Assembly: GCA_965644295.1 (NCBI GenBank)
Contig: CBFFRP010000616.1
Coordinates: forward strand, 128,859-192,858
Origin: Paraphysomonas bandaiensis
Taxonomy: Eukaryota > Protista > Chrysophyceae
DNA length: 64,000 bases
Direction of reading: 5' to 3'
A program made the position numbers and the translations under genes. Positions 1 through 46,700 of this stretch are shown here, in pieces (position 1 is the stretch's first letter; every line of letters begins with the position of its first letter). The notes beneath the pieces were generated by a model. It did not search any database, was not told the DNA's origin, and saw only the letters and a program-made list of their open reading frames with translations.

Positions 1-1788
1 TGTATCTGCAGGATCCAGTTCTTTATATAGTGGTGCCGCTGTGAGTGTATCATCTGGTTCTACAACTGCTGCTAATGAAGCGGGGGGGGGGCTGACTCTA
101 AGTAGTGGTGATGGCAGTATTGGGGGAAATATTGCTATTTCAAGTGGTTTGGGATTAGATGGGCGTGGTGGGGATATCTCGATGGGAGGAGGAGAATCTG
201 GAAGTGTTGGGGGTTCTGTTAATGTCAGGGGTGGTTTCTCCAATGTAGGAATTGGCGGTGATACCACTTTACAAGGCGGTGATTCAGAGTTGTTTGCTGG
301 AGCCGGTCTTGCATTAGCTGGAGGTTCTCAACTCAAAGGTGGTGATGCAGTCTTGTCAAGTGGAGCTGGTGGCGACGTTTCTATCACCACTTCTCTGTCA
401 CTCAGCAGCAGTGGTTCTGTTGCCATTGGTTCAGGGGTTGCATCGAGCGCATCTGGTGGATTAAAATTGGTGACCGGTCAGTCTGAACTGGGGCATTCTG
501 GTGACATTTTATTATCTGTTGGTGGCGGGAACGATGCCGGTGGCATATCACTAGCATCTGGTTCAGGTGTCATTAGCGGAGGAGAAGTCGCCATTGATGG
601 TGGTTCATCAATATCAGGAACTGGTGGCCGAGTGTCTTTGACAAGTGGTATATCCACATCTAGTAGTGGTTCTGGCAGTGTTTCACTGGTGTCATCTGCG
701 TCAACTGGACAATCGGGTTCTGTTACACTTTTATCTGGAACTGCCACTATGTCATCATCTGGTTCAGTATTGATATCATCTGGTGATGGTGCTTCAGCTG
801 GTAGTGTAGCTGTATCTGCAGGATCCAGTTCTTTATATAGTGGTGCCGCTGTGAGTGTATCATCTGGTTCTACAACTGCTGCTAATGAAGCGGGGGGGGG
901 GCTGACTCTAAGTAGTGGTGATGGCAGTATTGGGGGAAATATTGCTATTTCAAGTGGTTTGGGATTAGATGGGCGTGGTGGGGATATCTCGATGGGAGGA
1001 GGAGAATCTGGAAGTGTTGGGGGTTCTGTTAATGTCAGGGGTGGTTTCTCCAATGTAGGAATTGGCGGTGATACCACTTTACAAGGCGGTGATTCAGAGT
1101 TGTTTGCTGGAGCCGGTCTTGCATTAGCTGGAGGTTCTCAACTCAAAGGTGGTGATGCAGTCTTGTCAAGTGGAGCTGGTGGCGACGTTTCTATCACCAC
1201 TTCTCTGTCACTCAGCAGCAGTGGTTCTGTTGCCATTGGTTCAGGGGTTGCATCGAGCGCATCTGGTGGATTAAAATTGGTGACCGGTCAGTCTGAACTG
1301 GGGCATTCTGGTGACATTTTATTATCTGTTGGTGGCGGGAACGATGCCGGTGGCATATCACTAGCATCTGGTTCAGGTGTCATTAGCGGAGGAGAAGTCG
1401 CCATTGATGGTGGTTCATCAATATCAGGAACTGGTGGCCGAGTGTCTTTGACAAGTGGTATATCCACATCTAGTAGTGGTTCTGGCAGTGTTTCACTGGT
1501 GTCATCTGCGTCAACTGGACAATCGGGTTCTGTTACACTTTTATCTGGAACTGCCACTATGTCTTCATCTGGTTCAGTATTGATATCATCTGGTGATGGT
1601 GCTTCAGCTGGTAGTGTAGCTGTATCTGCAGGATCCAGTTCTTTATATAGTGGTGCCGCTGTGAGTGTATCATCTGGTTCTACAACTGCTGCTAATGAAG
1701 CGGGGGGGGGGCTGACTCTAAGTAGTGGTGATGGCAGTATTGGGGGAAATATTGCTATTTCAAGTGGTTTGGGATTAGATGGGCGTGG
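1..1788 (+). repeat. Tandem coding repeat A, 810-nt (270-aa) unit, about 2.2 copies visible, may continue left of the window
   Basis: tgtatctgcaggatccagtt occurs at 1, 811 and 1621, and identity ends at 1788. I noticed one synonymous difference (754 A vs 1564 T). Confidence 0.97.
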
Positions 1789-25700: not shown

Positions 25701-28700
25701 GAAGTGGGGCGTCTCTGTCTGGCCCCAGTGGTAGTGCTCAGTTTTTTTCTGGTGATGGTGTTCTTTCTGGTTCTTTCTCAGTTGGAAGTGGCACTGTTTT
25801 ATATGACTCGGGTGCCGTGACCGTAGGAAGCGGAGATTCTTCTTCCGGACAGGCTGGTACTGTCAGTGTGCGCAGTGGATCATCTCTCAAAGGGTCTCAA
25901 GTGGAACTTGTTGCTGGGGATTCCAAAGGAGAAGGTGCTCCTGGTGGAAGTTTGTTCTTCGGGAGTGGTGGTGGTGATCTAGGTGGCATGATATCCATTG
26001 TTAGTGGTTCTGGTCTTAAAGGTGCTGCTGGTGATATTGAGATGAGAATTGGTGATACATTGGGGCTGAGTCGTGGTGGAACTATAGCTATGCGAGGCGG
26101 ATCTTCGCGTGGAGGTAATGGTGGAAACATCGCCATTTTTGGTGGTGAAAGCTTTTCTGAAACTGGATATGCGGGTGATATTGAAGTTTCAGGTGGTGAG
26201 AATTCTGCCACTGGCAGAGGTGGTAATGTAGGCGTATCTGGAGGTAGATCTGTAGGTGGTATGAGTGGCGACGTTGGTGTTTACTCCCAGTCCTCTTCGA
26301 CACAAAGTGGAGGAATTGATATTACTAGTGGAAGGTCGGCTCAGTCAGGTGGCATTCATGTGCAGTCTGGTGATGCCACTGTTCGCAGCGGTGATGTAGT
26401 CTTGAACACGGGAGATGCTACGAACAGTGGCAATGTAATAATTAGTGCAGGGCATGGAGATTCTGGGGGTATGATTTCATATTTCTCTGGTCGATCTGCG
26501 ACTGCAAGCGGTGGTGACATGACTCTTTTTAGTGGCGATAGCATTGCTCCTGGCCAAAGTAGTGGTCAGGCTGTGTTTGGTTCTGCATCTTCGCACGTAT
26601 CTAGTGGTTCGATTGTTGTCTCCTCTGGTTCATCTAGCTCCGGTTCTAGTGGTTCTGTATTCATTGGTAGTGGTGACAGTGCGGCATCCATGGCTGGTGG
26701 CGTTACATTATCTGCGGGTGCTGGTGTATCCGATATTGGTGCCAGTGTTTCTGTTCATGCTGGTGACTCGATGGCCCAGTCTAGTGTAGGAGGCGAGTTG
26801 TCACTATTAAGTGGTTCTGGTTCTTCTGGTGGCGATGTGATGATTGAAAGTGGCAAAGGTTCACTATCTAAGGGTGGATCTATTGCTATCAATGCTGGTA
26901 AGTCTGACGATGGCACTGGAGGGTCGATTGAAGTTGGTAGTGGTAGCTCTGATGGTGGCCTCGGTGGTTTGTTGTCGTTAACTGGGGGCGACTCATTTGC
27001 ATCTATTGGTGGCGATGTTTTATTATCTTCCGGAGATTCCATGAACGATGTGAGTGGATCGGTTCGTTTAGTAAGTGGCAAATCTTTGAACGGCCTTACA
27101 AGTGGTGGTGTCACCCTCGGAACCAGTGGATCCATAATGGGAGCTACAGGTGACTTGATGCTTTCCACTGGTGGACTTAGCTCCGGAACATCTGGTAGTG
27201 TATCTGTAGAGACTGGTGGCGGTGGTGATGTTGGTGGCGACATATCTATGTCTGCAGGCGATGCCATTGAAGGTGGCAGTGTACAAGTACGTGGTGGCGC
27301 TGCATCTACTGGTGAGTCAGGTATATTGACCCTTGTCAGTGGGGCTTCATCGTCAACAGGGGGCGTGAGTGGATCGGTGGATATATCATCTGGATCGAGC
27401 AAAGGTTCAAGTGGGTCAGTGCGTATTCGCAGTGGTGAATCTGAGTTGCACAGTGGCTCTGTTATTTTGGCCACTTCAGATAGCTCTTTGGGTTCGGCTG
27501 GATCTATTTCGTTAAATACTGGTGAAAGTTCATCCGTAGTGGGTGCGGGTATATCTGTTCATGCCGGTGGATCATCTCTCGCCGAAGGGGTTGGTGGTGG
27601 TGTGTCGCTTCTTGGTGGTGAAGCTTCCCATGGTGGTGATATTATCCTCCGTTCTGGTGTCGGTGTTATCGGTCGCAGTGGATCCGTTGACATTTCTGTT
27701 GGTGAGAGTGCTGGAATGTCGGAAAGTGGGGCTGTGTCGATACGAGGTGGTGAATCTATGGGAGGTGGTCTTGGAGGCGAGGTGCTAGTTGAGGCTGGGT
27801 CTTCTACGATAGGTTCAGGCAGTGGTGGGTCGCTGGTACTTCGTGGTGGGGCATCTAGTGATGGTGTGGGTGGTGGCGTTGCGATTTCCAGTGGTACGAG
27901 TGCCTCTGGTGCTAGTGGTTCTGTGACAGTTTCGAGTTCTACAGGGGACGTTTCTAGCGGCTCTGTGTTCGTCAGTAGTGGTGACTCGTTTAAATCTTCA
28001 GCTGGTGATATCGTTCTCTCTGCTGGATCTAGCCATGTAGATAGCAAAGGTGGCGCTATCCGTGTGGAGTCTGGAGCTGGATCTGAAGGTTCTGATGTTT
28101 TAATAGCTGCTGGTCTAGGAACGTCATTGGACGGAGGATCTGTCATTGTTACTAGTGGTGGAAGTAGTTCAAAGAGTGGTGGTGTGGTTCTAACATCACT
28201 CGGTGGTAGTGGTGCAAGTGGTTCGATTGAGATTGGAAGTGGATCCTCTGCTTTAGAATCTGGCACTATTTCTTTATCCAGTGGTGATTCTGTGGGCTCT
28301 TCAGGTGCCATTGTTTTGGAAAGTGGGAGCAGTTCTATGTCTTCTGCTGGCTCTGTTTCTTTACAGGCTGGTACCAGTATTGGGCATGAGGGTGCTAGTT
28401 TAAAGCTATCTTCTGGACATTCACTTGTGAGTTCTCAGTCTGGTGGTCATGTTTCTCTTGCTGCAAGTGATGGTGCTTATGGGGGGTCGATTAAGATACA
28501 AAGTGGAACTGGGTCCAATGGGGCCTCTGGTGATATTGTTGTTTCTGCGGCCTCAAGTGAATCGGATAAAGGTGGATCTGTTTCATTTACTGGTGGATCC
28601 TCCCAATCTGATAATGGTGGGGATGTCACCGTATCTTCCGGATTTGGCCGAAAAGGTGGGATCACTAGAATCTCTGCTGGCGCATCTAGTGGTTCAGATG

Positions 28701-31700
28701 GTGGTGAAGTGTTGATAGCAGGTGGCGGAAGTGACATGACAGTTGGTGGTACTCTCCGGCTTAGATCTGGTATTGGCTTTACTGCGTCAGGAGGCATTGA
28801 AATAGGTTCCCCGGTATCGTCCAGTGGAAGTTCCGGGTCTATGACTGTGTCGACTGGGGACTCCAGTGATGAATCTGGCAGTTTATTTTTAGCTGTAGGT
28901 TCAAGTGCGCATGGTGTTGGCGGATCTGTCGTCGTCAGTTCTGGTGAGGGGCATATAGGTGGTAATGTAGATATTGGTGGTGGTCGGGGTTTGGACAGTT
29001 CTGGTGGAGGAGTAGAAGTACGGAGTGGTGATTCTGCTGATGCCACATCGTCTTCTGGAGACATTACCTTTTATTCTGCAGATACTTCATCGTCATCTGG
29101 TAAAGTGCTAATTAGCACGGGGAAGTCGTTTAGTGCTTCGTCTGGTGCAGTGTTTGTTGGGAGTGGGGATAGTAACGATTTGACTGGAGAAGTGGCAGTC
29201 GTGGGTGGTTCTAGTAGTGGTGTTGGGCAATCGAGCTTAACTTTGTCAGGTGGTAGTTCTCTCAGTGGTAAAGGAGGTAGTGTGCGGCTCGGTAGTGGTT
29301 ATGGTACGGAAGGAGGTGATGTTTTTGTCAGAAGTTCTGGTGCATCTGCGGGCCGTTCTGGTGACGTTAGAGTTAGTGTTGGTGACAGCAGTGAGCTTTT
29401 CTCTGGCGGAGTCGTGGAGGTTCGTAGTGGACATTCTCTTGCTGGCGAAAGTGCTGGTGGGATTGATATGAAAGCTGGTTCCGGTATGTCTGCTGTGGGT
29501 GGCTCATTTGGAATTTCTGGAGGAGCATCATCGGACTCTATGGGTGGTTCTGTGATCATATCCAGTGGTAAAGGTGGTGATAAAAGTAGTGGAGAAATCT
29601 TGATGAAAACAACTGATGGAATTTCGAGTGGTGATATTGGAATTAGTAGTGGTCATTCGTCCCTTGGCAAGGCTGGGGACATTACTTTGGATGTCGGTGA
29701 TTCAAGTCACACTGTTGGAGGTGGAATAGAAATGTCCGCAGGAAATGGGTTGTCTGGCGGTCGCATTGACCTGTCGGGTGGTCATGCTGTTGAATCTAAT
29801 GGTGGTTCAATTTCCGCTCGTAGTGGAACCAGTACTACGTTTGGAACTGGGGATGTACATATCGCATCGGCAGATGGAAAGTTGTCAACTGGTGATGTAG
29901 TTATGTCCAGCGGAATATCATCGCATGGAACTTCTGGAATGGTGACTTTGAGAAGTGGATCGAGCGATTCGTCCTCTGCAGGCGCTGTCAATATTTTTGC
30001 AGGGTCTAGTGAAGCGACATACGGGGCGTATGTCTCCATTGCTGCTGGCGATGCACTCATGGACAGTGGAATTGGAGGCACCCTTTCAATTATGGGGGGC
30101 TCTGGTGGTAGTGGTGGTGATGTTAGTATATCTGGTTCTGCAGGGAGTGATGTGGATGGTGGAAATGTCCGACTAAGAGGAGGATCTGGTGTGAAAAATG
30201 GAGGAGTTTTGGAAATGACATCAGGGGATTCCACCGCTAGTGGTCGAGGTGGTGAAGCTTCGGTGAATGCTGGTGCTGGATTCAGCGGTGGATCAGTGCA
30301 GTTACGTGCCGGGGATATATTAGGGACTGGTGGTGGCACGGTCTCCTTGTCTAGTGGCTCGTCCAGTGTTGAAAGTGGTGGCATTTTGCTCTCTACTTCA
30401 AGTTCTGAGATTTCCAGTGGTACAATTGCTATTCAGTCTGGTGATGGTCTAAGTGGCAGTTCGGGTGATGTTGTAGTAACAACCGGGACTTCAGATCATG
30501 GAGGTGGCGATATAATGTTGTCTGTTGGGTCCAGTGGTGATGGCAGTTATCGAGGTGCATCAATTTCTATGGCTTCTACAAGGAATTCTTTAAGTGATGG
30601 TGGTTTTGTAAGTATTACTGGTGGGACTGGAAATTCTGTGGCAGTTATCAGTGGTGATGGTTCCACAACTGCAGCTGAAAGAAGTGGAGTACTTCTCTTG
30701 GCATCGGCCTCGAGTGCGTCATCTGGATCTGTATCTTTAGGAAGCGGTTTCGCTTCAAGTGGGTTGTCTGGTGAAGTCAAAATTGGATCTGGTGACAGTA
30801 CTGATGGGAAAGCAGGAGATGTTGCTGTCATCTCAGGGGATAGTATGACGAGTGGTGGAGATGTATATCTTAATGCTGGCGGTTCAAGAGGTGAGAGTGG
30901 GGGCAACACATACATCAGTGCTGGAAAAGGTAGTTCTGGTGGCAGTGTTAGTATTTATAGTGGTGCTGGTGAAGCTGGAACTAGTGGTGATATAGCTGTT
31001 GCTGTTGGCAGCAGTACTGGATCTTTTCAATCTGGAGATATTTCTCTAGCTGGTGGTCAATCTGAAACGTCTTCTGGTGGCTTTATTTTGATTCAGGGGT
31101 CTGCTAGCGGCAGCGTTGACGTTAGTGGTGGGGTGTCATCAGAAGATAGTACTGGTGGTGCGGTCCTTATTAGTAGCGGCTTAAGCCACGGCGGTCCAAG
31201 CGGAACTGTATTGCTTTCTTCTTCGTCTGGACAGTTTAGTAGTGGCGATGTGATTGTTGCTACTGGATCTTCTGAAGTTGGATCCGCGGGCTCTATTGCT
31301 CTTTCTGCTGGTAATAGCGATGGCATAGACAGCAGCGGTTCCGCCGTATCTGTCACTGCAGGATCTGGTGCTCAAGGAGGGGATATAAATATTTCTGGCG
31401 GATCAGGGTATCACGATCGGGGAGGAACTGCTCTTATTTTAGGAGGAAGCAGTAGTTCGTCTAATTCTGCTGGCGGAGATGCTGTATTGCGTTCGGGATT
31501 TTCGTCTTTCTCTAGCGGTGAAGTTATTGTGGAAAGTGGCAATTCGGATGGAACTACGGGAGCCGTACGAATATCATCGGGTGCTTCCCTATCTCGTGCC
31601 GGAAAGATTGAAATACAATCTGGAGAAAGTGTGCATCAAGAAGGTGCGGATGCAACCCTGTCGGCTGGAAGTGATAGTTCAGTGTCAGAACGGGGCGGTA

Positions 31701-34700
31701 CGGCTCGTGTGTTTGGTGGTAGTGGTTCTAGTGGAGGAGGTGTAATCTTGGAGAGTGGTAGAGGTGTTGACAAAGCCTCCGGATCTATTGTTATTGCGGT
31801 TTCTGAGTCGTTGGGCGCTTTTGGAAGCGGTGATGTCTTGATGCAAGGCGGTCAAGTGCGAGAAGGAAATGGTGGGGCTGTCAGGATTGCAGGCGGTTAT
31901 TCATCTTCCAGTGGGCCTGGTGGTGATGTTTCAATTTCCAGTGGGTCGTCTTTCGATGGCGAGAGTGGGGCTATTCGCGTCCAGTCATCTTCTGCTTTCA
32001 ACTCTGGAGATGTTTCTGTTGGGACTGGTGATAGTTTGGCACCGTCTGGATCAATTCTGTTGTCTACTGGGCAGTCAGAGGATGGTACGTCAGGTGGCAT
32101 CGACATTAGCATAGGTGACAGTGATAAAAATGGTGGTGGTATATCCCTTAGCGGTGGGCTTGGTACTGGTAAAGGTGGGGATGTTACCTTAAATGCTGGG
32201 AGGAGCGCTAACGGTGTTGGTGGCTCTCTCATATTTTCAAGCGGTGGGACTGATACAACTAATACGAGTGGCTCTGTTTATATTCATACTGAGTCTTCTA
32301 GCTCCTCCGGTGGAGTGTATATTTCCAGTGGAGCGTCAACGACCTTTGAATCTGGCTCGGTTGTCATAAATAGTGGTGATATGGTGCAAGCGGAAGCTTT
32401 GTCTACGGGTGCCTCACTCATATCAGGAAGTTCACTTCATAGCAGTGGCGTCAGCACATTAGTTGGTGGAGGTAGATCTGAATTTTCTGACGGTGTGGGT
32501 GGAAGTGTCTTGATTACAAGTGGTAGCGGAAGTACAGGTGGTGATATTGCTGTGTATAGCGGTGATGGGAAGAACGGTGGGTCAATTTTGTTGTCTTCCA
32601 GTGGAGGAAATATTGATATAGACTCGGGGGTGTCTGCAACAACTGGCGGGACTGTGTCACTTCGTGGTGGCGAAAGCATTCGTAAAGGGGGTGATGCTAC
32701 TGTGTCGGCTGGATGGTCTCATGAAGATTCTGGTGGCTCCACTGTAATATCTAGTGGCTCGAGTGTTTCGTCGTCGAGTGGACTCATATCAATTTACTCA
32801 GAGGCCGCTCCGCTTTACAGTGGGGATATTGTTTTGTCTAGTGGTTCTGCTGTATTTGGTGATTCTGGATCGGTGTATATATCCTCAGGTTCTTCTGCGA
32901 AATCTTCTACTGGTGTCGTTGCCATTAGTTCTGGTTATAGTGTCAGCGAGCGCGGTGGTGATATGGTTTTGTCCGCTGGCTCAGGTGGTTTGGGAGGCAA
33001 TGTGGTATTGTCTTCTGGCGAGGCAACAGATTCTGTGGAAAGTGGATCGATGTCAGTACGGAGTTCATCTCGTGGTAAAGCTGTATTTGGTTCTAGCATT
33101 GCAACGTCTGGATTTAGCGGTGATGTCTCAGTCGATAGTGGAGATGCTAAGCTGGAATCGGGCGATGTTAGGTTAAGATCCGGTGATAGTGTGGATTCAT
33201 CTGCAGGATTTGTGTCTGTGGTAGCCGGTACTAGCTCATCAAGTGGTGGTGCAAGTGTGAGACTCATTGGAGGAAAAAGCAGCGGCAATGTAGGGGGCAA
33301 CGTATTCGTTGCTGGTGGTGATGGTGTGCGTGGTGGTGATATGGAGCTTTCTAGCGGTGATGGTTTTGGAGATTCCAGTGGAAATTTGTCGCTACTCGTA
33401 CCCGGTGGAACGGATTCCATTGAAACGGGTTCTATACTTTTGAGTGTTGGTCCCGCCGAAAAAGCACCCGGTTCTATTTTCTTGTCTTCAGGTTCATCAT
33501 TGGGTGGCGGGTCTGTGACTGGGAATATTGATGTCGCCAGTGGGGACTCAGTTGATGGAATTGGCGGGAGTGTGTCGATGTTCAGTGGATCAAGTAGAAT
33601 AGGGAATAGCGGTAAAATGCGCTTGGCAACATCATCTGGTGATAGTTCAGGCGATTTACTTATTAATTCTGGTGATGCCATTTCTGGCCAAGTTGGTGCT
33701 ATTCTTCTTTCTGGTGGTCAAAGTAAATCTGAAACTGGCGATGGTGGTGTAGTATCTCTTCACGGTGGTCATGGATATCGAGGCGGATCGACTACTATTG
33801 ATGGGGGCGAGGGTGATTTCGGCGGTGAACTTAATCTTTCCGGAGGAACAGGTGTTTTCGAAGGAGGTAGTGTATCAATTGCCTCTGCTACTGGTTTATC
33901 GAGTGGGTCAGTATCTATTAGATCTGGTTCTTCTGGAGGTATTTCAGGTGATGTGGTTTTGGAGAGTGGTGACTCATCTGACGCGACATCGGGTGCTATT
34001 CGACTGAAAGTTGGTAGTAGTCTGAGTTCCGGCTCCGATGTTCATGTTGCAGCAGGTGTTTCGACTCAGTCGACAGGTGGTAGCGCAATAATAGCTGCTG
34101 GTGATGGTGTTAACGGGGGGGATGTTGTGATAAAAAGTGGTCGTGGAAGTAGTGGACACTCAGGCGGTGTGGATGTTAGTGTTCCAAGTACTGGGGCTAG
34201 TTCTGGCGGTGGGATTACCTTTCGGTCTGGAAATTCTGAAATTGGTGGTGGTGGAAGTATTGCTCTTACAGGCGGTGCGAATGCCGAAACCTCTGATACA
34301 GTTGGCGGTGCTGTGAGTGTTCATGGTGGTTTCAATTCTGGCCGAGTTTCTATTATGTCAGGGTCTTCGTTGTCTGGAGGTGGAGGAGCAGTTGTATTGG
34401 AAACCCCAGAGTCTGCTCAAAGCGGGGATATATCCCTAGTGACCGGGAAGGCGTCGCAGAAATCTGGTTCTGTACGTGTATTATCTGGGCCATCAGGATA
34501 TACTGATGGCGGTAGTGTAAGCATTGGTGGTGGCGGAAGCGATGGACATGATTCGTCAGGGGGGGGTATATCCCTGATTGCTGGATATGGAAGTACAGGT
34601 GGAGCTGTTGTCGTTAACGGAGGTCTTGGTACTTCTAGTATTGGAGGTAGCGTTTACCTTAGTGGTGGTAGTGGAATGAGCGCTGATATTGCGAGTGGTA

Positions 34701-37700
34701 GTGTTGATATTCTTACCTCGCAGTCATCATCTGGAACAGGAGCTATTTCATTGCTTAGTGGTGACAGTAGATTTTCGTCTTCTGGATCAATTGCAATTCG
34801 ATCTGGAAGCAGCCATGAAGCATCGTCTGGTGATATAGCGATTGTTGGTGGCACGAGTGGAGGTGTAGCAGTGGGATCATCAGTTACAGTGTCTGCAGGT
34901 GATAGCAGTATCACCAGTGGTGGAAAAGCTCTTATTTCAGGCGGAAATGGTGCTGTTGGAGGTGAGGTTGCTGTTGGAGGTGGCTTGGGTCATGATAGCA
35001 CAAGTGGTTCTATAAGCCTGTCATCTGTTGAGTCAAGTAGTGGTAGTTCTGTATCAATCAAATCTGGTATGTCGTTTATCGGGGATAGTGGAAGGGTGTC
35101 TATTAGCGCCGGAGAGTCATTAAGTGGTGCCGGTGGCATCATTGATTTGGTAGGCTATTCGAGTGCTCATGGCTCGGGGGCTGTCAACGTTGTTGGTGGC
35201 TCGGTATCAATTTCTTCCGACTCAAGCAGTTCTTTGAGTACTGTAGATATTAGCTCTGGCTCGTCAACCGGAAACACTGGTGATGTTAGAGTTGCCACTG
35301 GGTCGAGTATGATTGGCAATTCGGGTACCATCATACTATCAGTCGGTTCAACGTCAGTTTCGTCGGGACCAGCGTTATCGCTAGGTGACGATTCTAATGA
35401 TGCTAAAGGCATAATTATGTCTGCAGCAGTTTCGAGTAGTGAAAATGGTGGTTCTGTTACAGTGAGTAGTGGTGGTAGTGCATCATCTGCTGATACCGGG
35501 GGGGGTATATATCTCCGTACAGGTATGTCTACATCTGTTAGTGGACCCGTAAAATTGTTCAGTGGTACTGCTTCATTTTCTTCTGGAGTTGTGTCTGTTG
35601 CAAGTGGACAATCAAATGAGAATAGTGGAAATGTTGTTGTATCCAGTGGTGCTGCTGATCGTAATGGTGGTGAGTTGCTTTTATCTACAAGTGATTCTGG
35701 CTCTGCTGGTGATATTAGGATAAGCGGAGGTGTCTCAACAAGTAATCGTGGATCTTCTGTCGTAGTTAATGCCGGCAGCGCTCTGGGTGCGAGTGCTATG
35801 GATGAAGGGGGTAGTATTACACTCTCTGCTGGAAGTAGTCTGGGGTCTGCTGGTGGTGACGTTATTGTGTCCTCTGGAGATGGTACTGTTTCTAGCGGTG
35901 TGACTATATTGCGGTCTGGTGATAGTAGCCTTGAGCTATCCAAGGATCACGTTGACATAAGTTCTGGTGGATCGGCTTCTTTTCGCATACCCATGCCCAC
36001 TGGGGATGGAGACAGTGGTACAATTGGCCTTGGAGTTTTGGACCCATCTTCTGATAGGGCTGTCTATGATTTCCGCCTCCGAGCGTTTAATGACAGCTCG
36101 CGTATGTTGATTGCTAGTTCGCCAATGCAGGTCACTAAGGTTCAATACTCCTCTGATGAGAGAATAAAGCGTGATATTCAGCCAGTTGATGAAAATTCTA
36201 TACTTCATCGACTCAAACAAGTTCAGCTTCAGAGTTATCGGTACACTGAGGAGTGGCTTGGAGTGCGTGACGATGTTCAGGACGTGAGAGTAAGAGGTGT
36301 TATTGCCCAGGAATTGGCTAAAGTGTTTCCTGAACATGTTAAAGTCATACCTGAATACACTTTAGAAGACAAAAATATTACATTTAAAAATTTCCACCAA
36401 GTTGACAAGACATCCCTAATGATGGATTTAATTGCTGCTATTCAAGAACAGGCCAAGCGATTTTCCTCAGAAGAGAACACTGCAAGTAAGGGTGGGGATG
36501 TACGTATCAGTTCCGCTACGTGGGATGAAATCATGGACTCGTCTCCAGATACTGCAACCGGAGATGTGTATATTACGTCTGGTGAATCAAGATTTGCGCA
36601 ATCTGGTAATGTTCGAATTGGGAGTGGAAGTAGTGGTGCGACTTCTGGCGATGTGAAGATTGAAGCTGGTTTGAGTGGATCTGGTAATGGATCTCCTGTT
36701 CTGATACATGGTGGATCTGCTTCACAGTCTCACGAAAATAGTGGTGGGTCTGTTGAGCTGTCTGGTGGTGGTGGATATTCATCTGGGGATGTCGTGGTGT
36801 CCACGCTCTCAGCGACTGGTAGTTCTGGAAGTATTGTCCTTTCTGTTGGCAGCTCAAAGTCTGGATCGGGTGATCTTCGCTTCACTGCTGGTTCTGGTTC
36901 CCGTGGTGGCAACTCGGTTATTGTTTCAGGCTCGGCAACTTCTGGTGCTGGTGGTGCTATGTTTATTTCTAGTGGCGCGTCTGCAGTGGGGACTGGTGTC
37001 AGTGGAGAATCATTCTTTGGGTCTGCATCATCTCCTAGTGGCAGCGGGAGTGTTCGTATCGCCTCCGGTTTATCAAGTGCGAATAGCGGCTCTCTTACTA
37101 TTGCGAGTGGAGACAGTGATGACGGGCGTGTCTCTCCTTTGTCATTATTTGGAGGCAGTAGTAAGTATCATTCTGGTGGTGATGTTTTAGTGCATGCGGG
37201 CTCTTCTGAGTCTTCCTTAAGTGTTGGTGGTAGTCTGCATTTGTCTGCTGGTTCCGGACCCACTGGCGGAAATACAAAAGTATCTGGTGGAGATGGTATT
37301 TCTGAAAGTGGAGGGGGTTTAATTTTGAGCGGTGGTGATGGATCTGGTTCGGCGGCAGCAGGAAATGTAGATATTCAGGGAGGTCAGTCTTCTCTATATT
37401 CCGGAAGTGTCCGGTTAGGTGCTGGTTTTAGCGAAAATTCTCCTGGTCGGGTTAGTATATATTCTGGCAATTCTGTAGCTCGTAGTGGTGGCGACGTGAC
37501 TTTGTCGTCTGGCTCGAGTGTGACCGGTAGTAGTGGTTCTCTTTTAATAGAGACGTCTGATAGTACATATGGTAAATCGGGAGATATAACGCTAATGACT
37601 GGGTTATCAAAAACTGGATCAGCTGGTGGTATTCTAGTCATGGTTGGTGATTCTCAATCTGCAGCGGAAGGGTCTGAAATTGTATTTTCATCCGGTAGTG

Positions 37701-40700
37701 GATTAAGTGGTGGTGCCGTGTCAATAACTGGTGGATATGGCTCAACCCATAGCGGGGGGGATGCTTTACTCTCATCAGGCTTATCGCTGTCGGGTTCAGG
37801 TGGAAATATTGGCATAAGTGGTGGTGCATCGAATGGCTTAGGATATGGTGGAAACGTTGATATATCCAGCGGCTCTAGCGAGGCACGTTCTGGCTCCATT
37901 TCTCTTCGATCGGGTAGCGGCGATGCAGGAAGTTCTGGGGACATCTTTATTTCGACAGGATCATCTATGTCTGGTTCGTCGGGTAGTGTAGTTCTTTCTA
38001 CTGGTGATTCCTCTAATGCAGTTGTTGGTTCCGATATATCCGTTACTGCTGGTTCTGGATCAGAAGGAGGATCGGTATCTGTTCGTGGAGGAACCGGTGC
38101 ATCTGCTGATGGAGGCGAGACTGTGTTATCGGGAGGCGAATCTCGACTTGCATCTGGAGGATCTGTGACTGTACATGGTGGTTCTACTGAATCCTCTATG
38201 AATGGAGGCGACGTCAATTTGGTAGGTGGAACGAGCAGTGGTGGATTGAGTGGTACTGTTGCGGTGCATTCTTCTTCCAGTGGTACATCTGGTAGGGTTG
38301 TAATATCAACAGGCGACTCTTCTTCTGGTTCCTCTGGAGGCATTGCCCTCTCAGTTGGAAATTCTTTATCGGGGTCCGTAGGGTCTGATGTTACCGTCAG
38401 CGCTGGTTCTGGTTCTTCGGGTGGATCTGTGTCTGTTGTTGCGGGCGTTGGACAGTCTGGAGGTGGAGGAGTTGCCTTATTATCAGGTGGTGATGGGACA
38501 ACTGACCCGGGAGGAATGGTTGGAATCCGTGGGGGAGACTCTGATGTACGTGGAGGCGATATAGATATTTCTAGCGGTGATGGGGGGTCAGTGTCGTCCG
38601 GTTCCGTGTTTATTAGTTCTACGGCTTCTCCACATTCTAGTGGGGGTGTTTTTATATCTTCTGGTTCTGTTGGTAGTGGTTCTTCTGGTGATATCTCTCT
38701 GTCTGTTGGCGAATCTCTGTCGGCTGAAGGCTCTGCAGTATCTCTGATTTCGGGACAGGGAAGTTCTGGTGGATATGCGTCAATGACAGCTGGTGCTGGT
38801 AGTATTGGTGCTGGGGGTAGAGCTGTTGTTGCAGGAGGCGATTCCTTAAATGCAAGAGGTGGTGATGCCTTAATTTTTGGTGGGTCTTCTATGTACGCAG
38901 GTAGTGGAGGGCATGTCGAATTAAAGAGCGGGAATAGCGTTTCCGGTGTCAGTGGCGATGTATTCATAAGTAGCCCCTCGGCATTGGAGAGTGGTGGTGT
39001 GAATATTGTTACTGGGGAATCGAGTACTGGAACACCAGGTTCAATTATGCTCTCAGTCGGTGAGTCTTTGTCGTCTGTAGGGTCTTCGTTATCTGCCAGT
39101 GCGGGATCAGGTGTAAGTGGTGGAGTGCTAGCATTTCAAGGTGGGAGAGGGACTGAGTCTGGTGGATATTCATCAATTCTTGGTGGGTTGGCTTTATCAG
39201 GTTCAGGTGGAAATGTTGGCATAAGTGGTGGTGCATCGAATGGCTTAGGATATGGTGGAAACGTTGATATATCCAGCGGCTCTAGCGAGGCACGTTCTGG
39301 CTCCATTTCTCTTCGATCGGGTAGCGGCGATGCAGGAAGTTCTGGGGACATCTTTATTTCGACAGGATCATCTATGTCTGGTTCGTCGGGTAGTGTAGTT
39401 CTTTCTACTGGTGATTCCTCTAATGCAGTTGTTGGTTCCGATATATCCGTTACTGCTGGTTCTGGATCAGAAGGAGGATCGGTATCTGTTCGTGGAGGAA
39501 CCGGTGCATCTGCTGATGGAGGCGAGACTGTGTTATCGGGAGGCGAATCTCGACTTGCATCTGGAGGATCTGTGACTGTACATGGTGGTTCTACTGAATC
39601 CTCTATGAATGGAGGCGACGTCAATTTGGTAGGTGGAACGAGCAGTGGTGGATTGAGTGGTACTGTTGCGGTGCATTCTTCTTCCAGTGGTACATCTGGT
39701 AGGGTTGTAATATCAACAGGCGACTCTTCTTCTGGTTCCTCTGGAGGCATTGCCCTCTCAGTTGGAAATTCTTTATCGGGGTCCGTAGGGTCTGATGTTA
39801 CCGTCAGCGCTGGTTCTGGTTCTTCGGGTGGATCTGTGTCTGTTGTTGCGGGCGTTGGACAGTCTGGAGGTGGAGGAGTTGCCTTATTATCAGGTGGTGA
39901 TGGGACAACTGACCCGGGAGGAATGGTTGGAATCCGTGGGGGAGACTCTGATGTACGTGGAGGCGATATAGATATTTCTAGCGGTGGTGGGCGTTCAACA
40001 GGCGCTAGTGGGTCAGTCCTTATTCGTTCAGAGAGCGTAGGTGATGCTGGTCGTAGTGGTTCTATTAAATTACTCTCTGGTTCGTCGTTTTACCAAGCTG
40101 GTGGAATCGAGTTGAGTGTGGGACAAACGTCGATTGCAGGTGTTGCAGGTGATATCAATCTACTATCTGGTGAGGGTATAGTTGGTGGTCATGTTTCTTT
40201 ACAAGGCGGAGTTGGTGATAAAATTGGCGGAGCTGTGCAAATTCGTGGAGGTAGTTCTCGCTTGGGTGGGGGTGGTGTATCAGTTGAAAGTGGTTCGTCA
40301 GAAACAGGTCCTAGTGGAGGTGTTAGTGTGGTGTCTGCGAGCTCAACTGGTAACACAGGTGTTATGGAAATAGGATCTGGTAACTCTGGCAATGGGGATA
40401 GTGGGAGTGTTTTCATGTACAGTGGAGAAGCAAGTGATGGTTCTGGCGGTGTTTTAGATATACGCGGTGGTCGTGGCAGCAGTTTTGGAGGTCACGTAAT
40501 AGTTTCTGCGGGGTATGGAGCGAAGGGTGGTGACATGTCTGTCAGTAGTGGTTCTGGTGACACTGTTAGTGGCCAGTTGTTGTTATCCAGTGGCGATAGC
40601 TATCAAGATGTTGGATCGACTGGGAATGTTGTGATTTTAACTGGTGCGTCTGGTGGTGCTAGTGGTGATATATTGGCAATGACGGGTTCTTCTGAAGGGG

Positions 40701-43700
40701 ACTCTGGCTCTGTAGAGTTGGGAACTGGAGATAGCAAATCTGGTAGAGCTGGAGATAGTAGTATCGTAGCAGGATCAACTTTATCGTCTTCAGGTGCTGA
40801 AGTTAGCATTGTAGGTGGTACTTCGGAAGGCAGTGTAGGGGGTGGAGTGTCAGTAGTATCTGGTTTTGGTCCACGTAGTGGCAATGTCATTGTGAAGAGT
40901 AGCGGTGGTACCGTTTCATCTGGCGATGCTATTGTGGCATCTGGAGATGTAAGTGGAAGCGGATCTAGGTCTGGTGATGTTACGATATCTGCTGGAGTTG
41001 GTATGCATTTATTGGGTAGTAGAATACATTTGAGTGGCGTGGATTCAACTGGTAGCAGTATTACTATGGAGAGTGGTTATGGTATAGGACGTAGTGGAAA
41101 TATTTCTATTTCAACTGCTCTCGTAGATTTTGCATCTGGTGTTGTTGATATTGCATCCGGTAACTCGGTTGTTGAATCCTCTGGCGAAGTTTTTCTGCGC
41201 TCTGGATATGGTGAAGAGTCATCAGGTAGTGTCATTGTGCAGACCGGGGAATCTGGTAATGTCGGTGGTACGGTTGAGGTATCTAGCGGTGATGGATTAA
41301 TTGGAGGTCGTGTTGCTTTTAGTTCAGGAAATTCCAAAAGTGGAAACGGAGGTTCCATAGACTTAATTAGCGGGATGAGCATCAACTCTGATCGAAGTGG
41401 TGGTGAAATTTCAATTTCTAGCTCATCTTCTACTGCATCAACAGGTCCAATACGTATATCTAGCGGACTCTCGACATATTCATCGGGACCTGTGTCCCTA
41501 ACGACAGGCGACAGTTCGGATTCAACTGCAGGTTCTGTGCATGTAAATGCTGGATCCAGTGGTGCTGATATTGGTTCTGATGTGGCAATCGTTGCTGGTA
41601 GTAGTTCTGGGGCTGGTGGTACTGTTTCATTGAGTGCTGGTTCTGGTGCAGCTGGTGGTGACTTAATTATTCGAAGTGGGATGGGATCAGATAAGTCTGG
41701 TGGCTCTGTGTTGATTAGTGCTGCAGATTCCAGTGGGAGTGAGTCATCTGGTGGAGAAGTATCACTAGTTGCGGGTCATTCGGTTGGTGGTGAAGGTGGT
41801 GATGCCTTGTTATCTGGCGGGTCTTCAGAGAGTGGACCTGGTGGAAATGTTGAACTGATAAGTGGTGCAAGCGATTCTGATGTGTCTGGCTCTGTTTTGG
41901 TATCATCTCATTCTGGTGATGTTGGATCTGGAGACGTGACTGTTTTATCAGGATCTTCACATACTGGAATGAGTGGATCCGTAGTGGTGTCATCTGGTGC
42001 TTCTGCCACTGGTAGTTCTGGAGATATTGTTCTTTCTGTTGGTACCGGTGGAGGAACCGATAGTGTTAGAGCTGGTGCAGTAACTGTTTCAAGTGGTTCT
42101 GGCAATATAGGTGGAGATGTATCGATATCAGCTGGTATTGGTTCTGTTGGGTCAGGTGGATCTGTGAGTATTTCATCGGAATCTAGCTCATCAATGGCTT
42201 CGACTGGTGGTGATATTGACATTAACAGTTCATCGTCGTTAGGATCATCTGGTAAGGTTTCGATGTCTAGTGGTTCATCGGAAATATCACCCTCTGGTTC
42301 GGTGTTGATATCGACAGGCGACAGTTCGGATTCAACTGCAGGTTCTGTGCATGTAAATGCTGGATCCAGTGGTGCTGATATTGGTTCTGATGTGGCAATC
42401 GTTGCTGGTAGTAGTTCTGGGACTGGTGGTACTGTTTCATTGAGTGCTGGTTCTGGTGCAGCTGGTGGTGACGTAACTATTCGAAGTGGGATGGGATCAG
42501 ATAAGTCTGGTGGCTCTGTGTTGATTAGTGCTGCAGATTCCAGTGGGAGTGAGTCATCTGGTGGAGAAGTATCACTAGTTGCGGGTCATTCGGTTGGTGG
42601 TGAAGGTGGTGATGCCTTGTTATCTGGCGGGTCTTCAGAGAGTGGACCTGGTGGAAATGTTGAACTGATAAGTGGTGCAAGCGATTCTGATGTGTCTGGC
42701 TCTGTTTTGGTATCATCTCATTCTGGTGATGTTGGATCTGGAGACGTGACTGTTTTATCAGGATCTTCACATACTGGAATGAGTGGATCCGTAGTGGTGT
42801 CATCTGGTGCTTCTGCCACTGGTAGTTCTGGAGATATTGTTCTTTCTGTTGGTACCGGTGGAGGAACCGATAGTGTTAGAGCTGGTGCAGTAACTGTTTC
42901 AAGTGGTTCTGGCAATGTAGGTGGAGACGTATCGATATCAGCTGGTATTGGTTCTGTTGGGTCAGGTGGATCTGTGAGTATTTCATCGGAATCTAGCTCA
43001 TCAATGGCTTCGACTGGTGGTGATATTGACATTAACAGTTCATCGTCGTTAGGATCATCTGGTAAGGTTTCGATGTCTAGTGGTTCATCGGAAATATCAC
43101 CCTCTGGTTCGGTGTTGATATCGACAGGCGACAGTTCGGATTCAGCTGCAGGTTCTGTGCATGTAAATGCTGGATCCAGTGGTGCTGATATTGGTTCTGA
43201 TGTGGCAATCGTTGCTGGTAGTAGTTCTGGGACTGGTGGTACTGTTTCATTGAGTGCTGGTTCTGGTGCAGCTGGTGGTGACGTAACTATTCGAAGTGGG
43301 ATGGGATCAGATAAGTCTGGTGGCTCTGTGTTGATTAGTGCTGCAGATTCCAGTGGGAGTGAGTCATCTGGTGGAGAAGTATCACTAGTTGCGGGTCATT
43401 CGGTTGGTGGTGAAGGTGGTGATGCCTTGTTATCTGGCGGGTCTTCGGAGGTTGGGCGATCTGGTGGGGTCAGAGTTTCTGGTGGTACGAGTTCATTTGA
43501 GTCTGGGTCTCTACTCTTTTCCTCTTCGATGTCTTCTCAGAAGTCTGGTGATGTTGCTCTTGTAACTGGTTTGTCTCGCACTAGTACTAGCGGATCCATT
43601 TTAGTATCTACTGGTGTTTCTAGCGAAGGTGACTCTGGTGACATTGCACTTGTTGTGGGTAGTAGTGTATCTAAAGGTGGTAGTATTACAACAAGCAGTG

Positions 43701-46700
43701 GTTCCGGCAATGTAGGTGGAGATGTATCGATATCAGCTGGTATTGGTTCTGTTGGGTCAGGTGGATCTGTGAGTATTTCATCGGAATCTAGCTCATCAAT
43801 GGCTTCGACTGGTGGTGATATTGACATTAACAGTTCATCGTCGTTAGGATCATCTGGTAAGGTTTCGATGTCTAGTGGTTCATCGGAAATATCACCCTCT
43901 GGTTCGGTGTTGATATCGACAGGCGACAGTTCGGATTCAACTGCAGGTTCTGTGCATGTAAATGCTGGATCCAGTGGTGCTGATATTGGTTCTGATGTGG
44001 CAATCGTTGCTGGTAGTAGTTCTGGGACTGGTGGTACTGTTTCATTGAGTGCTGGTTCTGGTGCAGCTGGTGGTGACTTAATTATTCGAAGTGGGATGGG
44101 ATCAGATAAGTCTGGTGGCTCTGTGTTGATTAGTGCTGCAGATTCCAGTGGGAGTGAGTCATCTGGTGGAGAAGTATCACTAGTTGCGGGTCATTCGGTT
44201 GGTGGTGAAGGTGGTGATGCCTTGTTATCTGGCGGGTCTTCAGAGAGTGGACCTGGTGGAAATGTTGAACTGATAAGTGGTGCAAGCGATTCTGATGTGT
44301 CTGGCTCTGTTTTGGTATCATCTCATTCTGGTGATGTTGGATCTGGAGACGTGACTGTTTTATCAGGATCTTCACATACTGGAATGAGTGGATCCGTAGT
44401 GGTGTCATCTGGTGCTTCTGCCACTGGTAGTTCTGGAGATATTGTTCTTTCTGTTGGTACCGGTGGAGGAACCGATAGTGTTAGAGCTGGTGCAGTAACT
44501 GTTTCAAGTGGTTCTGGCAATGTAGGTGGAGATGTATCGATATCAGCTGGTATTGGTTCTGTTGGGTCAGGTGGATCTGTGAGTATTTCATCGGAATCTA
44601 GCTCATCAATGGCTTCGACTGGTGGTGATATTGACATTAACAGTTCATCGTCGTTAGGATCATCTGGTAAGGTTTCGATGTCTAGTGGTTCGTCGGAAAT
44701 ATCACCCTCTGGTTCGGTGTTGATATCGACAGGCGACAGTTCGGATTCAACTGCAGGTGCACTTCATTTTCGTACGGGAAATGGTCAATTAGGTGGAGGA
44801 ACTATAAGTTTTAGCGCTGGTAGTTCTGGTCTTGGTCAGTTGGGTGGTGATTTCGTTTTCGAAGGTGGGACTGCGTCGTATGGTGGTAATATCACTATGT
44901 CTGGTGGTTTTGCTGATGAATACGTCGGTGGGAGTATTTCATTGACTGGTGGTGGTGGTGTTTCGAGGGGTGGTAATATTGCTATTGCTGCAGGAGGTAA
45001 TGATATGTCGGATGGCGGGGATGCCTTGTTGATCAGTGGTAACGGAGTCACTGCTGGTGACGTGATTTTGATGGGTGGCTACTCGAGTAGTAAATCTGGA
45101 GGCAATGTAATCATAGAAAGTGGTGAAAGTTTTTCGGATGAATCTGGATTTTTAAGAATGCATTCATCTTCTTCTGAGTACCGGAGCGGTGACGTGATTA
45201 TTGAGTCCGGTTCCGTTGCGGAAGGTCGCAGCGGGAACATTCGTTTGAATTCTGGGGCGTCTACTTCTACGTCAACAGGTTCTATTGAACTGTCAACAGG
45301 TGATGGCAATGGAGTAGGGGCTGGTAGTATTGATATTTTTGGAGGTATGGGACGCGTTGGAGGGGGCGTTAGTATTGCGGGAGGTAGAAGTTTATCCGAA
45401 AGCGGGGGTTCAGTACTAATGCTTTCAGGTGAAAGTTCTTCAGTTTCTTATTCCAGTGGTGATGCACATATCGAAACAGCATCATCTTCAGGATCATCTG
45501 GTTCAGTGAAAATTACCAGCGGTGGTGCTAATGTATTGCAAACGGGTTCATTATATCTAGCAAGTGGAGATAGTTCGGGTTCAACTGCAGGTTCTGTGCA
45601 TGTAAATGCTGGATCCAGTGGTGCTGATATTGGTTCTGATGTGGCAATCGTTGCTGGTAGTAGTTCTGGGACTGGTGGTACTGTTTCATTGAGTGCTGGT
45701 TCTGGTGCAGCTGGTGGTGACGTAACTATTCGAAGTGGGATGGGATCAGATAAGTCTGGTGGCTCTGTGTTGATTAGTGCTGCAGATTCCAGTGGGAGTG
45801 AGTCATCTGGTGGAGAAGTATCACTAGTTGCGGGTCATTCGGTTGGTGGTGAAGGTGGTGATGCCTTGTTATCTGGCGGGTCTTCAGAGAGTGGACCTGG
45901 TGGAAATGTTGAACTGATAAGTGGTGCAAGCGATTCTGATGTGTCTGGCTCTGTTTTGGTATCATCTCATTCTGGTGATGTTGGATCTGGAGACGTGACT
46001 GTTTTATCAGGATCTTCACATACTGGAATGAGTGGATCCGTAGTGGTGTCATCTGGTGCTTCTGCCACTGGTAGTTCTGGAGATATTGTTCTTTCTGTTG
46101 GTACCGGTGGAGGAACCGATAGTGTTAGAGCTGGTGCAGTAACTGTTTCAAGTGGTTCTGGCAATGTAGGTGGAGATGTATCGATATCAGCTGGTATTGG
46201 TTCTGTTGGGTCAGGTGGATCTGTGAGTATTTCATCAGAATCTAGCTCATCAATGGCTTCGACTGGTGGTGATATTGACATTAACAGTTCATCGTCGTTA
46301 GGATCATCTGGTAAGGTTTCGATGTCTAGTGGTTCATCGGAAATATCACCCTCTGGTTCGGTGTTGATATCGACAGGCGACAGTTCGGATTCAACTGCAG
46401 GTTCTGTGCATGTAAATGCTGGATCCAGTGGTGCTGATATTGGTTCTGATGTGGCATTCGTTGCTGGTAGTAGTTCTGGGACTGGTGGTACTGTTTCATT
46501 GAGTGCTGGTTCTGGTGCAGCTGGTGGTGATGTTCTTTTAGAAAGTGGTGTTGGTTTGTCCCAGAAGAGTGGTAGTATTATTATTACTGGTGGCTTGTCT
46601 TCTGGTGTTTTTTCTGGCGGGAGTGTTGCTGTTAGTGGAGGGGGTAGCAGTGATGTAGGTGGTGAAGTTTCGTTTAGTGGCGGATCTGGTAAGAGTGGTG

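What the first reader, a model, noticed from the sequence alone, without database searches (positions are those of the whole stretch)
36137..36169. Predicted autoproteolytic cleavage site KVQYS|SDERIK
Seen: an intact S-D-x-R-x-K motif. Known: ICA domains cleave at the catalytic Ser using a Ser-Lys dyad once trimerised. In MYRF the cut is just before that Ser. Inference: cleavage here would split the visible chain into an N-terminal part of more than 12,000 aa and a C-terminal part of more than 9,200 aa that begins with the ICA domain and carries array G. The chaperone would not be discarded as in phages but would cap the next segment.
Basis: partly seen in the sequence, partly recalled or inferred. 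Interest (0 to 1): 0.72.

Follow-up and report, generated by a model that had tools for sequence, protein, structure and literature searches.

The report
Self-cutting site inside giant fibre protein

Summary
The motif is real. Window 36137-36169 reads KVQYSSDERIK in the only open frame. Pfam Peptidase_S74 (the ICA domain; 51 bits, cut-off 22) starts exactly at the second Ser (36152).

The best solved relative is the mouse MYRF ICA domain, by sequence (E 6e-9) and by fold (E 2.8e-8, rmsd 2.8 A). MYRF's P586|S587...K592 aligns with S|SDERIK, and mass spectrometry places the MYRF cut before that Ser. So the predicted bond is well founded by homology. It is untested.

New support: in 125 related domains, Lys is kept in 101 of 101 that have the Ser, but in only 11 of 24 that lack it. 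The next columns tied to the Ser are MYRF's Q639 and Y615 equivalents. This copy has the "live" residue at all of them.

- The open frame runs 13,303 codons further upstream, giving 34,637 codons to the contig end.
- It holds five ICA modules. Two are intact (ORF aa 4105 and 25355) and three identical ones have Ser replaced by Ala.
- If both intact sites cut, the released upstream piece is 21,250 aa.
- The downstream piece is at least 9,283 aa. It may end on contig C641 with a classical terminal ICA.

This scan had already noted the same system on overlapping windows of this genome.

The parts
2..64000 (+). Part of one giant open reading frame (frame 2). It opens at contig position 88948, which is 39,911 bases before the window, and runs off the contig end at window 64000: 34,637 codons are visible.
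   Evidence: No stop in frame 2. Upstream walk to a TAA. The window ends at the contig end.
5531..5950 (+). The other ICA module in the window. It is a catalytically dead copy reading YPADSRIK, with Ala where the Ser should be (codon 5576-5578). It is one of three DNA-identical copies in the ORF.
   Evidence: phmmer and alignment of the five modules. Zero DNA differences between the dead copies.
35927..36148 (+). Pre-ICA stalk and 'cable': beta strands, then the conserved stretch IGLG...YDFRLRA...SSPMQVTKVQY leading to the cut.
   Evidence: Conserved across 42 related modules. AF2 model strands E31-39, E44-53 and E59-63, then an extended segment.
36149..36154 (+). Predicted scissile bond between Ser (36149-36151, P1) and the nucleophile Ser (36152-36154, P1'), ORF residues 25354|25355.
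   Evidence: Aligned to MYRF P586|S587. The MYRF cut was mapped by mass spectrometry (PMC8326128).
36152..36169 (+). Dyad motif S-D-E-R-I-K. Ser 36152 and Lys 36167 correspond to MYRF S587 and K592. Arg 36161 corresponds to R590.
   Evidence: Mutagenesis of the MYRF equivalents is reported in PMC3742440 and PMC8326128.
36152..36343 (+). Pfam Peptidase_S74 core. It includes the YRY pair (MYRF Y615/Y617 equivalents) and the GVIAQ trimerisation motif.
   Evidence: residues 506-569 of the query that starts at 34637. alignment. GVIAQ is described in PMC3742440.
36344..36526 (+). Rest of the ICA domain: two strands and the C-terminal helix DKTSLMMDLIAAIQEQAKRF (36407-36460). This corresponds to the MYRF coiled-coil region.
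   Evidence: AF2 model E138-146, E151-159, H161-178, with pLDDT 88-97. Aligned to the 7dc3 chain up to residue 152.
36527..49834 (+). Downstream shaft of Gly/Ser-rich repeats with a 15-residue period (7+8). The repeats resume about 20 residues after the ICA helix.
   Evidence: Autocorrelation peaks at lags 15, 30 and 45 (hydrophobic residues) and 7, 15 and 22 (Gly). No Pfam family other than S74.
49835..64000 (+). Array G: 51.9 tandem copies of a 273-base (91-aa) unit, running off the contig end.
   Evidence: Tandem Repeats Finder: 91% matches, no indels.

Best explanation
The site is the active centre of an internal, MYRF-type intramolecular chaperone auto-processing (ICA, Peptidase_S74) domain in a giant Gly/Ser-rich fibre protein.

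Proposed mechanism, inferred from MYRF and the phage endosialidase. Three chains associate. The ICA domains form a trimer in which the 'cable' ...MQVTKVQYS-SDERIK of one chain threads through the beta 'donut' of its neighbour. Lys (36167) activates Ser (36152). The peptide bond just before that Ser is then broken.

Consequences. The upstream three-stranded shaft is released with ...KVQYS as its C-terminus. The downstream piece of at least 9,283 aa starts with SDERIKR... and keeps the ICA trimer as its N-terminal cap. A second intact site lies at ORF aa 4105, and three Ser-to-Ala modules lie in between. The ORF would therefore be a polyprotein cut into at least three fibres, with the dead modules acting as non-cutting folding or registration nodes.

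Shown: domain identity, residue-level match, fold, conservation, and presence in RNA libraries. Inferred: trimerisation, cutting, and separation of the pieces.
For: (1) Pfam S74 at 51 bits against a cut-off of 22, starting on the Ser.

(2) The best solved relative by sequence is MYRF ICA 7dc3, E 6e-9. The alignment puts P586-S587-D-L-R590-A-K592 on S-S-D-E-R-I-K. It also puts Y615 and Y617 on Y and Y, F621 on W, I637 on I, Q639 on Q, E647 on E, F666 on F, V669 on V and K671 on K.

(3) MYRF is cut at P586|S587 by mass spectrometry. S587A and K592A abolish the cut, and the Y615A/Y617A double mutant abolishes it (PMC8326128). S587C keeps cleavage, while K592H, K592R and K592M block it (PMC3742440). 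The released GA-1 chaperone chain 3gud starts at SDERHK.

(4) The AF2 model has pLDDT 83 overall and 88-97 in the ICA core. Foldseek finds only the four solved ICA structures: 7dc3 at E 2.8e-8, TM 0.66 and rmsd 2.8 A, then 3gw6, 3gud and 4uw8. The next hit has E 0.5.

(5) Family statistics. There are 796 relatives at E<=1e-3. Among 125 domains with both positions aligned, Ser-bearing domains keep Lys in 101 of 101 and Ser-less ones in 11 of 24. The next columns that depend on Ser status are A67/Q68 (MYRF A638/Q639) and Y44 (Y615). The window copy carries the 'live' residue at each.

(6) Purifying selection. The three paralogue types differ at 78-88% of synonymous sites but only 24-28% of non-synonymous sites. 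In a 1.1%-diverged contig of another organism label, the 3 changes inside the ICA are all synonymous (plus one synonymous change just upstream). In the flanks, 19 of the 36 listed changes alter the protein.

(7) Metatranscriptome contigs from three studies lie on the region at 99-100% identity. One 725-base contig bridges the site, and no joints were seen.

(8) The topology contrasts with the four terminal S74 domains of the same genome.
Against: There is no biochemical or proteomic evidence of cleavage. Trimer formation could not be modelled, because the tool folds a single chain only. In the monomer model the 'cable' has only pLDDT 60-72.

The Ser-Lys covariation is inflated by relatedness. 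On a tree the Ser state changes at least 9 times and the Lys state at least 4 times, with only one well-supported independent pair, so the controlled test has no power.

MYRF cleavage can be held back by partners (TMEM98, PAN-1; abstracts), so an intact dyad does not guarantee constitutive cutting.

RNA-library contigs do not prove transcription of the full ORF; the tool itself warns that DNA can be present in such libraries. The ends of the gene are not known.
Confidence: 0.68

Rival explanations
1. Folding or registration clamp that keeps its dyad but does not cut in vivo, or cuts only on a signal. The domain trimerises and nucleates the shaft on both sides, and the chain stays continuous across it.
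For: Three sister modules in the same ORF work, if they work at all, without the Ser, so cutting is not needed for the domain to be kept. 24 of 125 relatives lack the Ser. MYRF cleavage is known to be inhibited by TMEM98 and PAN-1 (abstracts).
Against: In Ser-bearing relatives Lys is invariant (101 of 101), but it decays when Ser is lost. That is hard to explain if the dyad had no catalytic role. In MYRF and phage proteins cleavage follows folding without a cofactor (PMC3742440).
Confidence: 0.2
2. The bond is cut but the two fibres stay joined non-covalently. The product would be a nicked continuous filament, not separate fibres.
For: In the MYRF structure the cable of one subunit threads through the neighbour's donut (PMC8326128). 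Shaft repeats resume about 20 residues after the ICA helix, so the cap is continuous with the next shaft.
Against: In all studied cases the N-terminal trimer leaves the ICA after the cut: the endosialidase releases the chaperone, and the MYRF N-terminal trimer goes to the nucleus (PMC3742440).
Confidence: 0.15
3. The ORF is not made as one chain. It could be an assembly artefact of repeats, a gene split by unseen introns or internal starts, or an untranslated relic. In that case the fragment sizes are meaningless.
For: The contig ends inside array G. Contig C621 is a reverse-complement duplicate of C616 at about 182,212-190,828. Three ICA modules are DNA-identical, as expected if repeats are hard to assemble.
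Against: 103,911 bases without a stop in one frame cannot be a relic. An independent 9,570-base contig of another organism label is collinear across the ICA, from about 6.2 kb upstream of window 34501 to 37822, with no indels. RNA-library contigs show no joints. The ICA is under purifying selection.
Confidence: 0.05

Closest known systems
MYRF / MrfA ICA domain (mouse MYRF, PDB 7dc3)
   Same: It is the best sequence and fold match. The domain is internal, so it stays on the C-terminal product. The Ser-Lys dyad, the YxY pair, GVIAQ and the C-terminal helix are all the same. The cut is predicted one residue before the Ser, as mapped in MYRF.
   Different: There is no Ndt80-type DNA-binding domain in the 5,000 aa upstream. 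No membrane-span-like hydrophobic segment occurs anywhere in the 34,637 aa. The flanks are Gly/Ser-rich shaft repeats on both sides. There are five modules per chain, against one in MYRF.
Phage tailspike and tail-fibre intramolecular chaperones (K1F endosialidase 3gw6, GA-1 gp12 3gud, T5 pb1 4uw8)
   Same: Same Pfam family and fold. The motif SDERxK is identical in its first four residues to GA-1. The presumed role is folding an upstream three-stranded beta-helix.
   Different: Phage domains are C-terminal and are discarded. Four other genes of this genome follow that plan, with a stop 105-156 aa after the Ser. This domain instead has at least 9,283 aa after it. Sequence similarity to the phage domains is weak (E 0.13).
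TLP-12 glycofibril candidates (Amoebophrya A0A8J1ZHD7, 19,853 aa; bioRxiv 10.1101/2025.09.30.679562)
   Same: It is a giant eukaryotic protein of short Gly/Ser repeats. Cryo-EM shows these forming a three-chain beta-helix, and the candidate proteins carry an ICA domain.
   Different: There the repeat is a 12-mer (GSxxSx7) and a single ICA sits at the C-terminus. Here the period is 15. The ICA modules are internal and multiple, with a mix of intact and Ser-less copies.

Membership tests
Peptidase_S74 / ICA domain | Match to Pfam PF13884 above the gathering score | tested here: met
   51 bits against a cut-off of 22, E 1.8e-13, profile positions 1-58 of 58.
Peptidase_S74 / ICA domain | Ser-Lys catalytic dyad in S-D-x-R-x-K | tested here: met
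   SDERIK at 36152-36169, aligned to MYRF S587 and K592.
Peptidase_S74 / ICA domain | ICA fold (beta 'donut' plus C-terminal helix) | tested here: met
   AF2 core pLDDT 88-97. Foldseek hits 7dc3, 3gw6, 3gud and 4uw8 and nothing else below E 0.5.
Peptidase_S74 / ICA domain | GVIAQ trimerisation motif | tested here: met
   RGVIAQEL is present. The motif's role is described in PMC3742440. The dead copies read GVIAE.
Peptidase_S74 / ICA domain | Upstream three-stranded beta-helix that the domain folds | tested here: inconclusive
   15-residue Gly/hydrophobic periodicity and beta strands in the monomer model fit this. A trimer could not be modelled.
Peptidase_S74 / ICA domain | Autoproteolysis on trimerisation | not testable with these tools
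   Needs protein work.
Phage-type terminal chaperone | Domain at the C-terminus, released and discarded | tested here: not met
   9,283 codons follow without a stop. The genome's four other S74 genes do meet this feature.
MYRF family | Ndt80-type DNA-binding domain upstream of the ICA | tested here: not met
   The Pfam scan of the 5,000 aa upstream found no family.
MYRF family | Transmembrane segment downstream of the ICA | tested here: not met
   No 19-residue window with Kyte-Doolittle mean above 1.8 in the 34,637 aa. The true C-terminus is not on this contig.
TLP-12-type glycofibril protein | GSxxSx7 dodecapeptide repeats | tested here: not met
   The period is 15, not 12. GSxxS spacing peaks at 15, 32 and 44.
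TLP-12-type glycofibril protein | C-terminal ICA domain | tested here: inconclusive
   Contig C641 carries array-G-like repeats followed by a terminal ICA and a stop. Its link to this gene is not shown.

The most novel reading that the evidence does not exclude
The ORF is a self-processing fibre polyprotein. Intact ICA nodes cut the three-stranded thread into separate fibres of about 4,100, 21,250 and at least 9,283 residues. Ser-less nodes only clamp and register the chains. Switching a single Ser on or off would then be how evolution sets fibre length and number. Each downstream fibre would carry an ICA trimer as a built-in N-terminal cap that may seed folding of the shaft after it.
Probability: 0.35. 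Interest if true: 0.8.

Novelty: new variant of a known kind. Interest (0 to 1): 0.55.

Why it matters
ICA domains are known in two settings: as throw-away C-terminal folding aids of phage fibres, and as the release switch of the membrane-bound factor MYRF. Here the same device sits repeatedly inside one of the longest open reading frames I know of in a eukaryote, in both intact and naturally disabled forms.

If the intact copies cut, one gene yields several very long fibres with defined ends. A rough scaling from the TLP-12 cryo-EM rise gives about 0.05 nm per residue, so the pieces would be about 0.2, 1.1 and at least 0.5 micrometres long. This scaling is my inference, not a measurement.

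This gives a testable rule for how very long three-chain fibres are kept in register and cut to length. It also provides a natural Ser-to-Ala control within the same molecule.

Tried and rejected
- **Tree-controlled covariation.** A tree-controlled test of Ser-Lys covariation gave only one well-supported independent pair, so it has no power. I report the raw counts with that caveat.
- **Pfam on the flanks.** Pfam on 5,000 aa either side of the site found nothing except S74. The shaft therefore belongs to no curated family.
- **MYRF membership.** This was rejected: no DNA-binding domain and no hydrophobic span.
- **Signal peptide.** The frame opens after a TAA and the first Met is at codon 70. 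No Gly/Ser-rich open frame of 150 aa or more lies in the 40 kb upstream. The true start and any signal peptide remain unknown, and I make no claim that the protein is secreted.
- **More genome sequence.** This affected the rest of C641 and the long genes on C427 and C297. Only C641:3684-9014 was read.
- **A tool error.** One collecting call failed with a machine error and was simply repeated.

Full report
**What is there**

Window 36137-36169 translates to KVQYSSDERIK (sequence). It lies in frame 2, which has no stop codon over the whole 64,000 bases, while the other five frames have 281 to 1,652 stops.

The window is G000:C616:128859-192858 and ends at the contig end. Walking upstream, the frame stays open to a TAA at contig 88945. 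The visible open frame is therefore 34,637 codons. The site is residue 25354|25355 of that frame, and 9,283 residues follow it.

The genome has 62.5 Mb in 669 contigs and is treated by the tools as intron-bearing. The stretch is found at 99-100% identity in marine metatranscriptomes. Earlier notes of this scan call the organism a golden alga; I did not test that.

**Is it an ICA domain?**

- Pfam Peptidase_S74 matches at 51 bits (cut-off 22). Profile position 1 falls on the Ser at 36152.
- Against all solved structures, the best sequence match is the mouse MYRF ICA domain 7dc3 (E 6e-9). The phage GA-1 and T4-like chaperones are weak matches (E 0.13).
- An AlphaFold2 model, built on an alignment of 42 related modules, has mean pLDDT 83 and 88-97 in the ICA core.
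- Foldseek returns only the four solved ICA structures: 7dc3 (E 2.8e-8, TM 0.66, rmsd 2.8 A over 107 columns), 3gw6, 3gud and 4uw8. It then drops to E 0.5.

**Where would it cut?**

The alignment puts MYRF H-P586-S587(Ala in the crystal)-D-L-R590-A-K592 on Y-S-S-D-E-R-I-K.

- MYRF is cut between P586 and S587 by mass spectrometry. S587A and K592A abolish cutting. Y615 and Y617 together are required. R590, I637, Q639, F666, L667 and V669 keep the cut specific (PMC8326128).
- S587C still cuts, while K592H, K592R and K592M do not. GVIAQ is the conserved trimerisation motif (PMC3742440).
- The window copy has the same residue at R590, Y615, Y617, I637, Q639, E647, F666, V669 and K671. It has conservative hydrophobic residues at F621 (W), F657 (L) and I663 (F).
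- The crystallised, released GA-1 chaperone begins SDERHK.

**Is the dyad under selection?**

An exhaustive search found 796 relatives at E<=1e-3, 112 at E<=1e-10 and 25 at E<=1e-30. One is from the oomycete Achlya hypogyna. Others come from a eukaryote protein set and from metagenomes.

In the 154 domains of the best 150 proteins, the Ser column holds Ser 101 times and Ala 18 times.

| Ser state | Lys kept |
|---|---|
| Ser present | 101 of 101 |
| Ser absent | 11 of 24 |

Raw Fisher p is 1.6e-11. Scanning all columns, the ones whose conservation next depends on the Ser are A67 and Q68 (MYRF A638 and Q639), I24, R54 and Y44 (MYRF Y615). The window copy has the "live" residue at each.

This picks out, from sequence statistics alone, residues that MYRF mutagenesis had implicated. 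The caveat is relatedness. On a tree the Ser state changes at least 9 times and the Lys state at least 4 times, with only one well-supported independent pair, so a controlled test has no power.

**Selection on this copy**

The three paralogue types in the ORF differ at 78-88% of synonymous sites (saturated) but at 24-28% of non-synonymous sites.

A 9,570-base contig from runs labelled as another organism is collinear with the window from about 6.2 kb upstream of 34501 to 37822, with 38 substitutions and no indels. Of the listed differences, the 3 inside the ICA and one just upstream are synonymous. In the flanking shaft, 19 of 36 change the protein.

**Expression**

Contigs from three metatranscriptome studies lie on 34500-38500 at 99-100% identity. 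One of 725 bases (35941-36665) bridges the site, and no joints were seen. The tool warns that DNA can be present in RNA libraries, so this is supportive only.

- **Five modules in one frame.** The ORF holds five ICA modules at aa 4090, 7062, 11610, 15148 (window 5531) and 25340 (window 36107).
  - The first and last read SDRRIK and SDERIK.
  - The three middle ones are identical in DNA and read PADSRIK and GVIAE.
  - If both intact sites cut, the pieces are 1-4104, 4105-25354 (21,250 aa, holding three dead nodes) and 25355 onward.
- **The mix is a family habit.** Relatives also combine live and dead modules in one protein: P0001 has S, A and D at the Ser position, and P0002 has S and A.
- **Two uses in one genome.** The genome has at least five other S74 matches. 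Four are classical: SDRRLK, then a stop 105-156 aa later. So the organism uses the domain in both the phage-like terminal way and the MYRF-like internal way.
- **Nature of the shaft.**
  - It is 24% Ser, 24% Gly and 9% Val, with no Cys and no hydrophobic span.
  - It has a 15-residue period (7+8).
  - It matches no Pfam family.
  - Shaft repeats resume about 20 residues after the ICA helix.
- **Possible 3' end.**
  - Array G (273-base unit, 51.9 copies) runs off the contig.
  - Array-G-like repeats recur on C621, which is a collinear reverse-complement duplicate of C616 at about 182,212-190,828.
  - They also recur on C641.
  - The part of C641 I could read continues in one frame into about 1,100 aa of GLTVxGAGLKV-type repeats. 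It then reaches a terminal ICA (VWVP|SDRRLK) and a stop.
  - C641 is a candidate 3' end of this gene or of a close paralogue; no link was shown.

**Closest published parallel**

The TLP-12 glycofibril is a cryo-EM structure of three intertwined chains of GSxxSx7 12-mers forming a triangular beta-helix coated with glycans. Its candidate proteins have about 20,000 residues in Amoebophrya and carry one C-terminal ICA (bioRxiv 10.1101/2025.09.30.679562).

The present protein shares the giant size, the Gly/Ser repeats and the ICA. It differs in repeat period and in having several internal modules. Full-text searches found no description of internal or multiple ICA modules in a fibre protein. That is an absence in the searched library, not proof.

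**Verdict**

The predicted bond is well founded by residue-level homology, fold, family statistics and selection, but cleavage itself is untested. The same system has already been noted by this scan on overlapping windows of this genome. I checked the overlapping claims independently: the frame length, the five modules, the Ser-to-Ala copies, the purifying selection and the terminal ICAs elsewhere in the genome.

Noticed in passing
window 14746-18279 and 21292-24825: The same set of four antisense ORFs (407, 239, 235 and 169 aa) recurs at an offset of 6,546 bases. This points to a large tandem duplication of about 2,182 codons in the shaft.
   Followed up: no
G000:C621 (whole contig, about 8.6 kb) against window about 53354-61970: C621 is a collinear reverse-complement copy of part of array G (the matched coordinates sum to 190,829). 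It is a haplotig or a redundant assembly piece, so the true length of array G is uncertain.
   Followed up: partly
G000:C641:3684-9014 (loci L021, L034-L037): One open frame runs from array-G-like repeats into about 1,100 aa of GLTVxGAGLKV-type repeats, then a terminal ICA (SDRRLK) and a stop 156 aa after the Ser. It is a candidate 3' end of the giant gene or of a paralogue.
   Followed up: partly
G000:C427:112842-113018, C297:482898-483074, C664:7516-7692: Three further genes have a classical C-terminal S74 domain with an intact SDRRLK. Two of them sit in open frames of about 4,770 aa.
   Followed up: partly
window 36815-36849: A 35-base word is shared with other, more deeply covered contigs in three runs, seen as loose ends on both sides. 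It is probably a repeat word shared with another copy of the shaft.
   Followed up: no
window 37804: One low-depth metatranscriptome contig (depth 4.1) lacks one base here. This is most likely an assembly error, since the other runs do not show it.
   Followed up: no
contig C616:88948-89160 (about 39.9 kb before the window): The giant frame opens after a TAA with a hydrophobic stretch (AVLNILLSLYLQCILG) that has no Met before it. The first Met is at codon 70. The real start may lie in a short upstream exon.
   Followed up: partly
loci L010 and L011 (GCA_024449685.1 and GCA_024449835.1): The closest multi-ICA relatives (P0001 with three modules, and P0023) sit on 48-60 kb contigs of two very fragmented assemblies. 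They lie next to tubulin-tyrosine-ligase and HSP70 genes, so they are in a eukaryotic setting.
   Followed up: no
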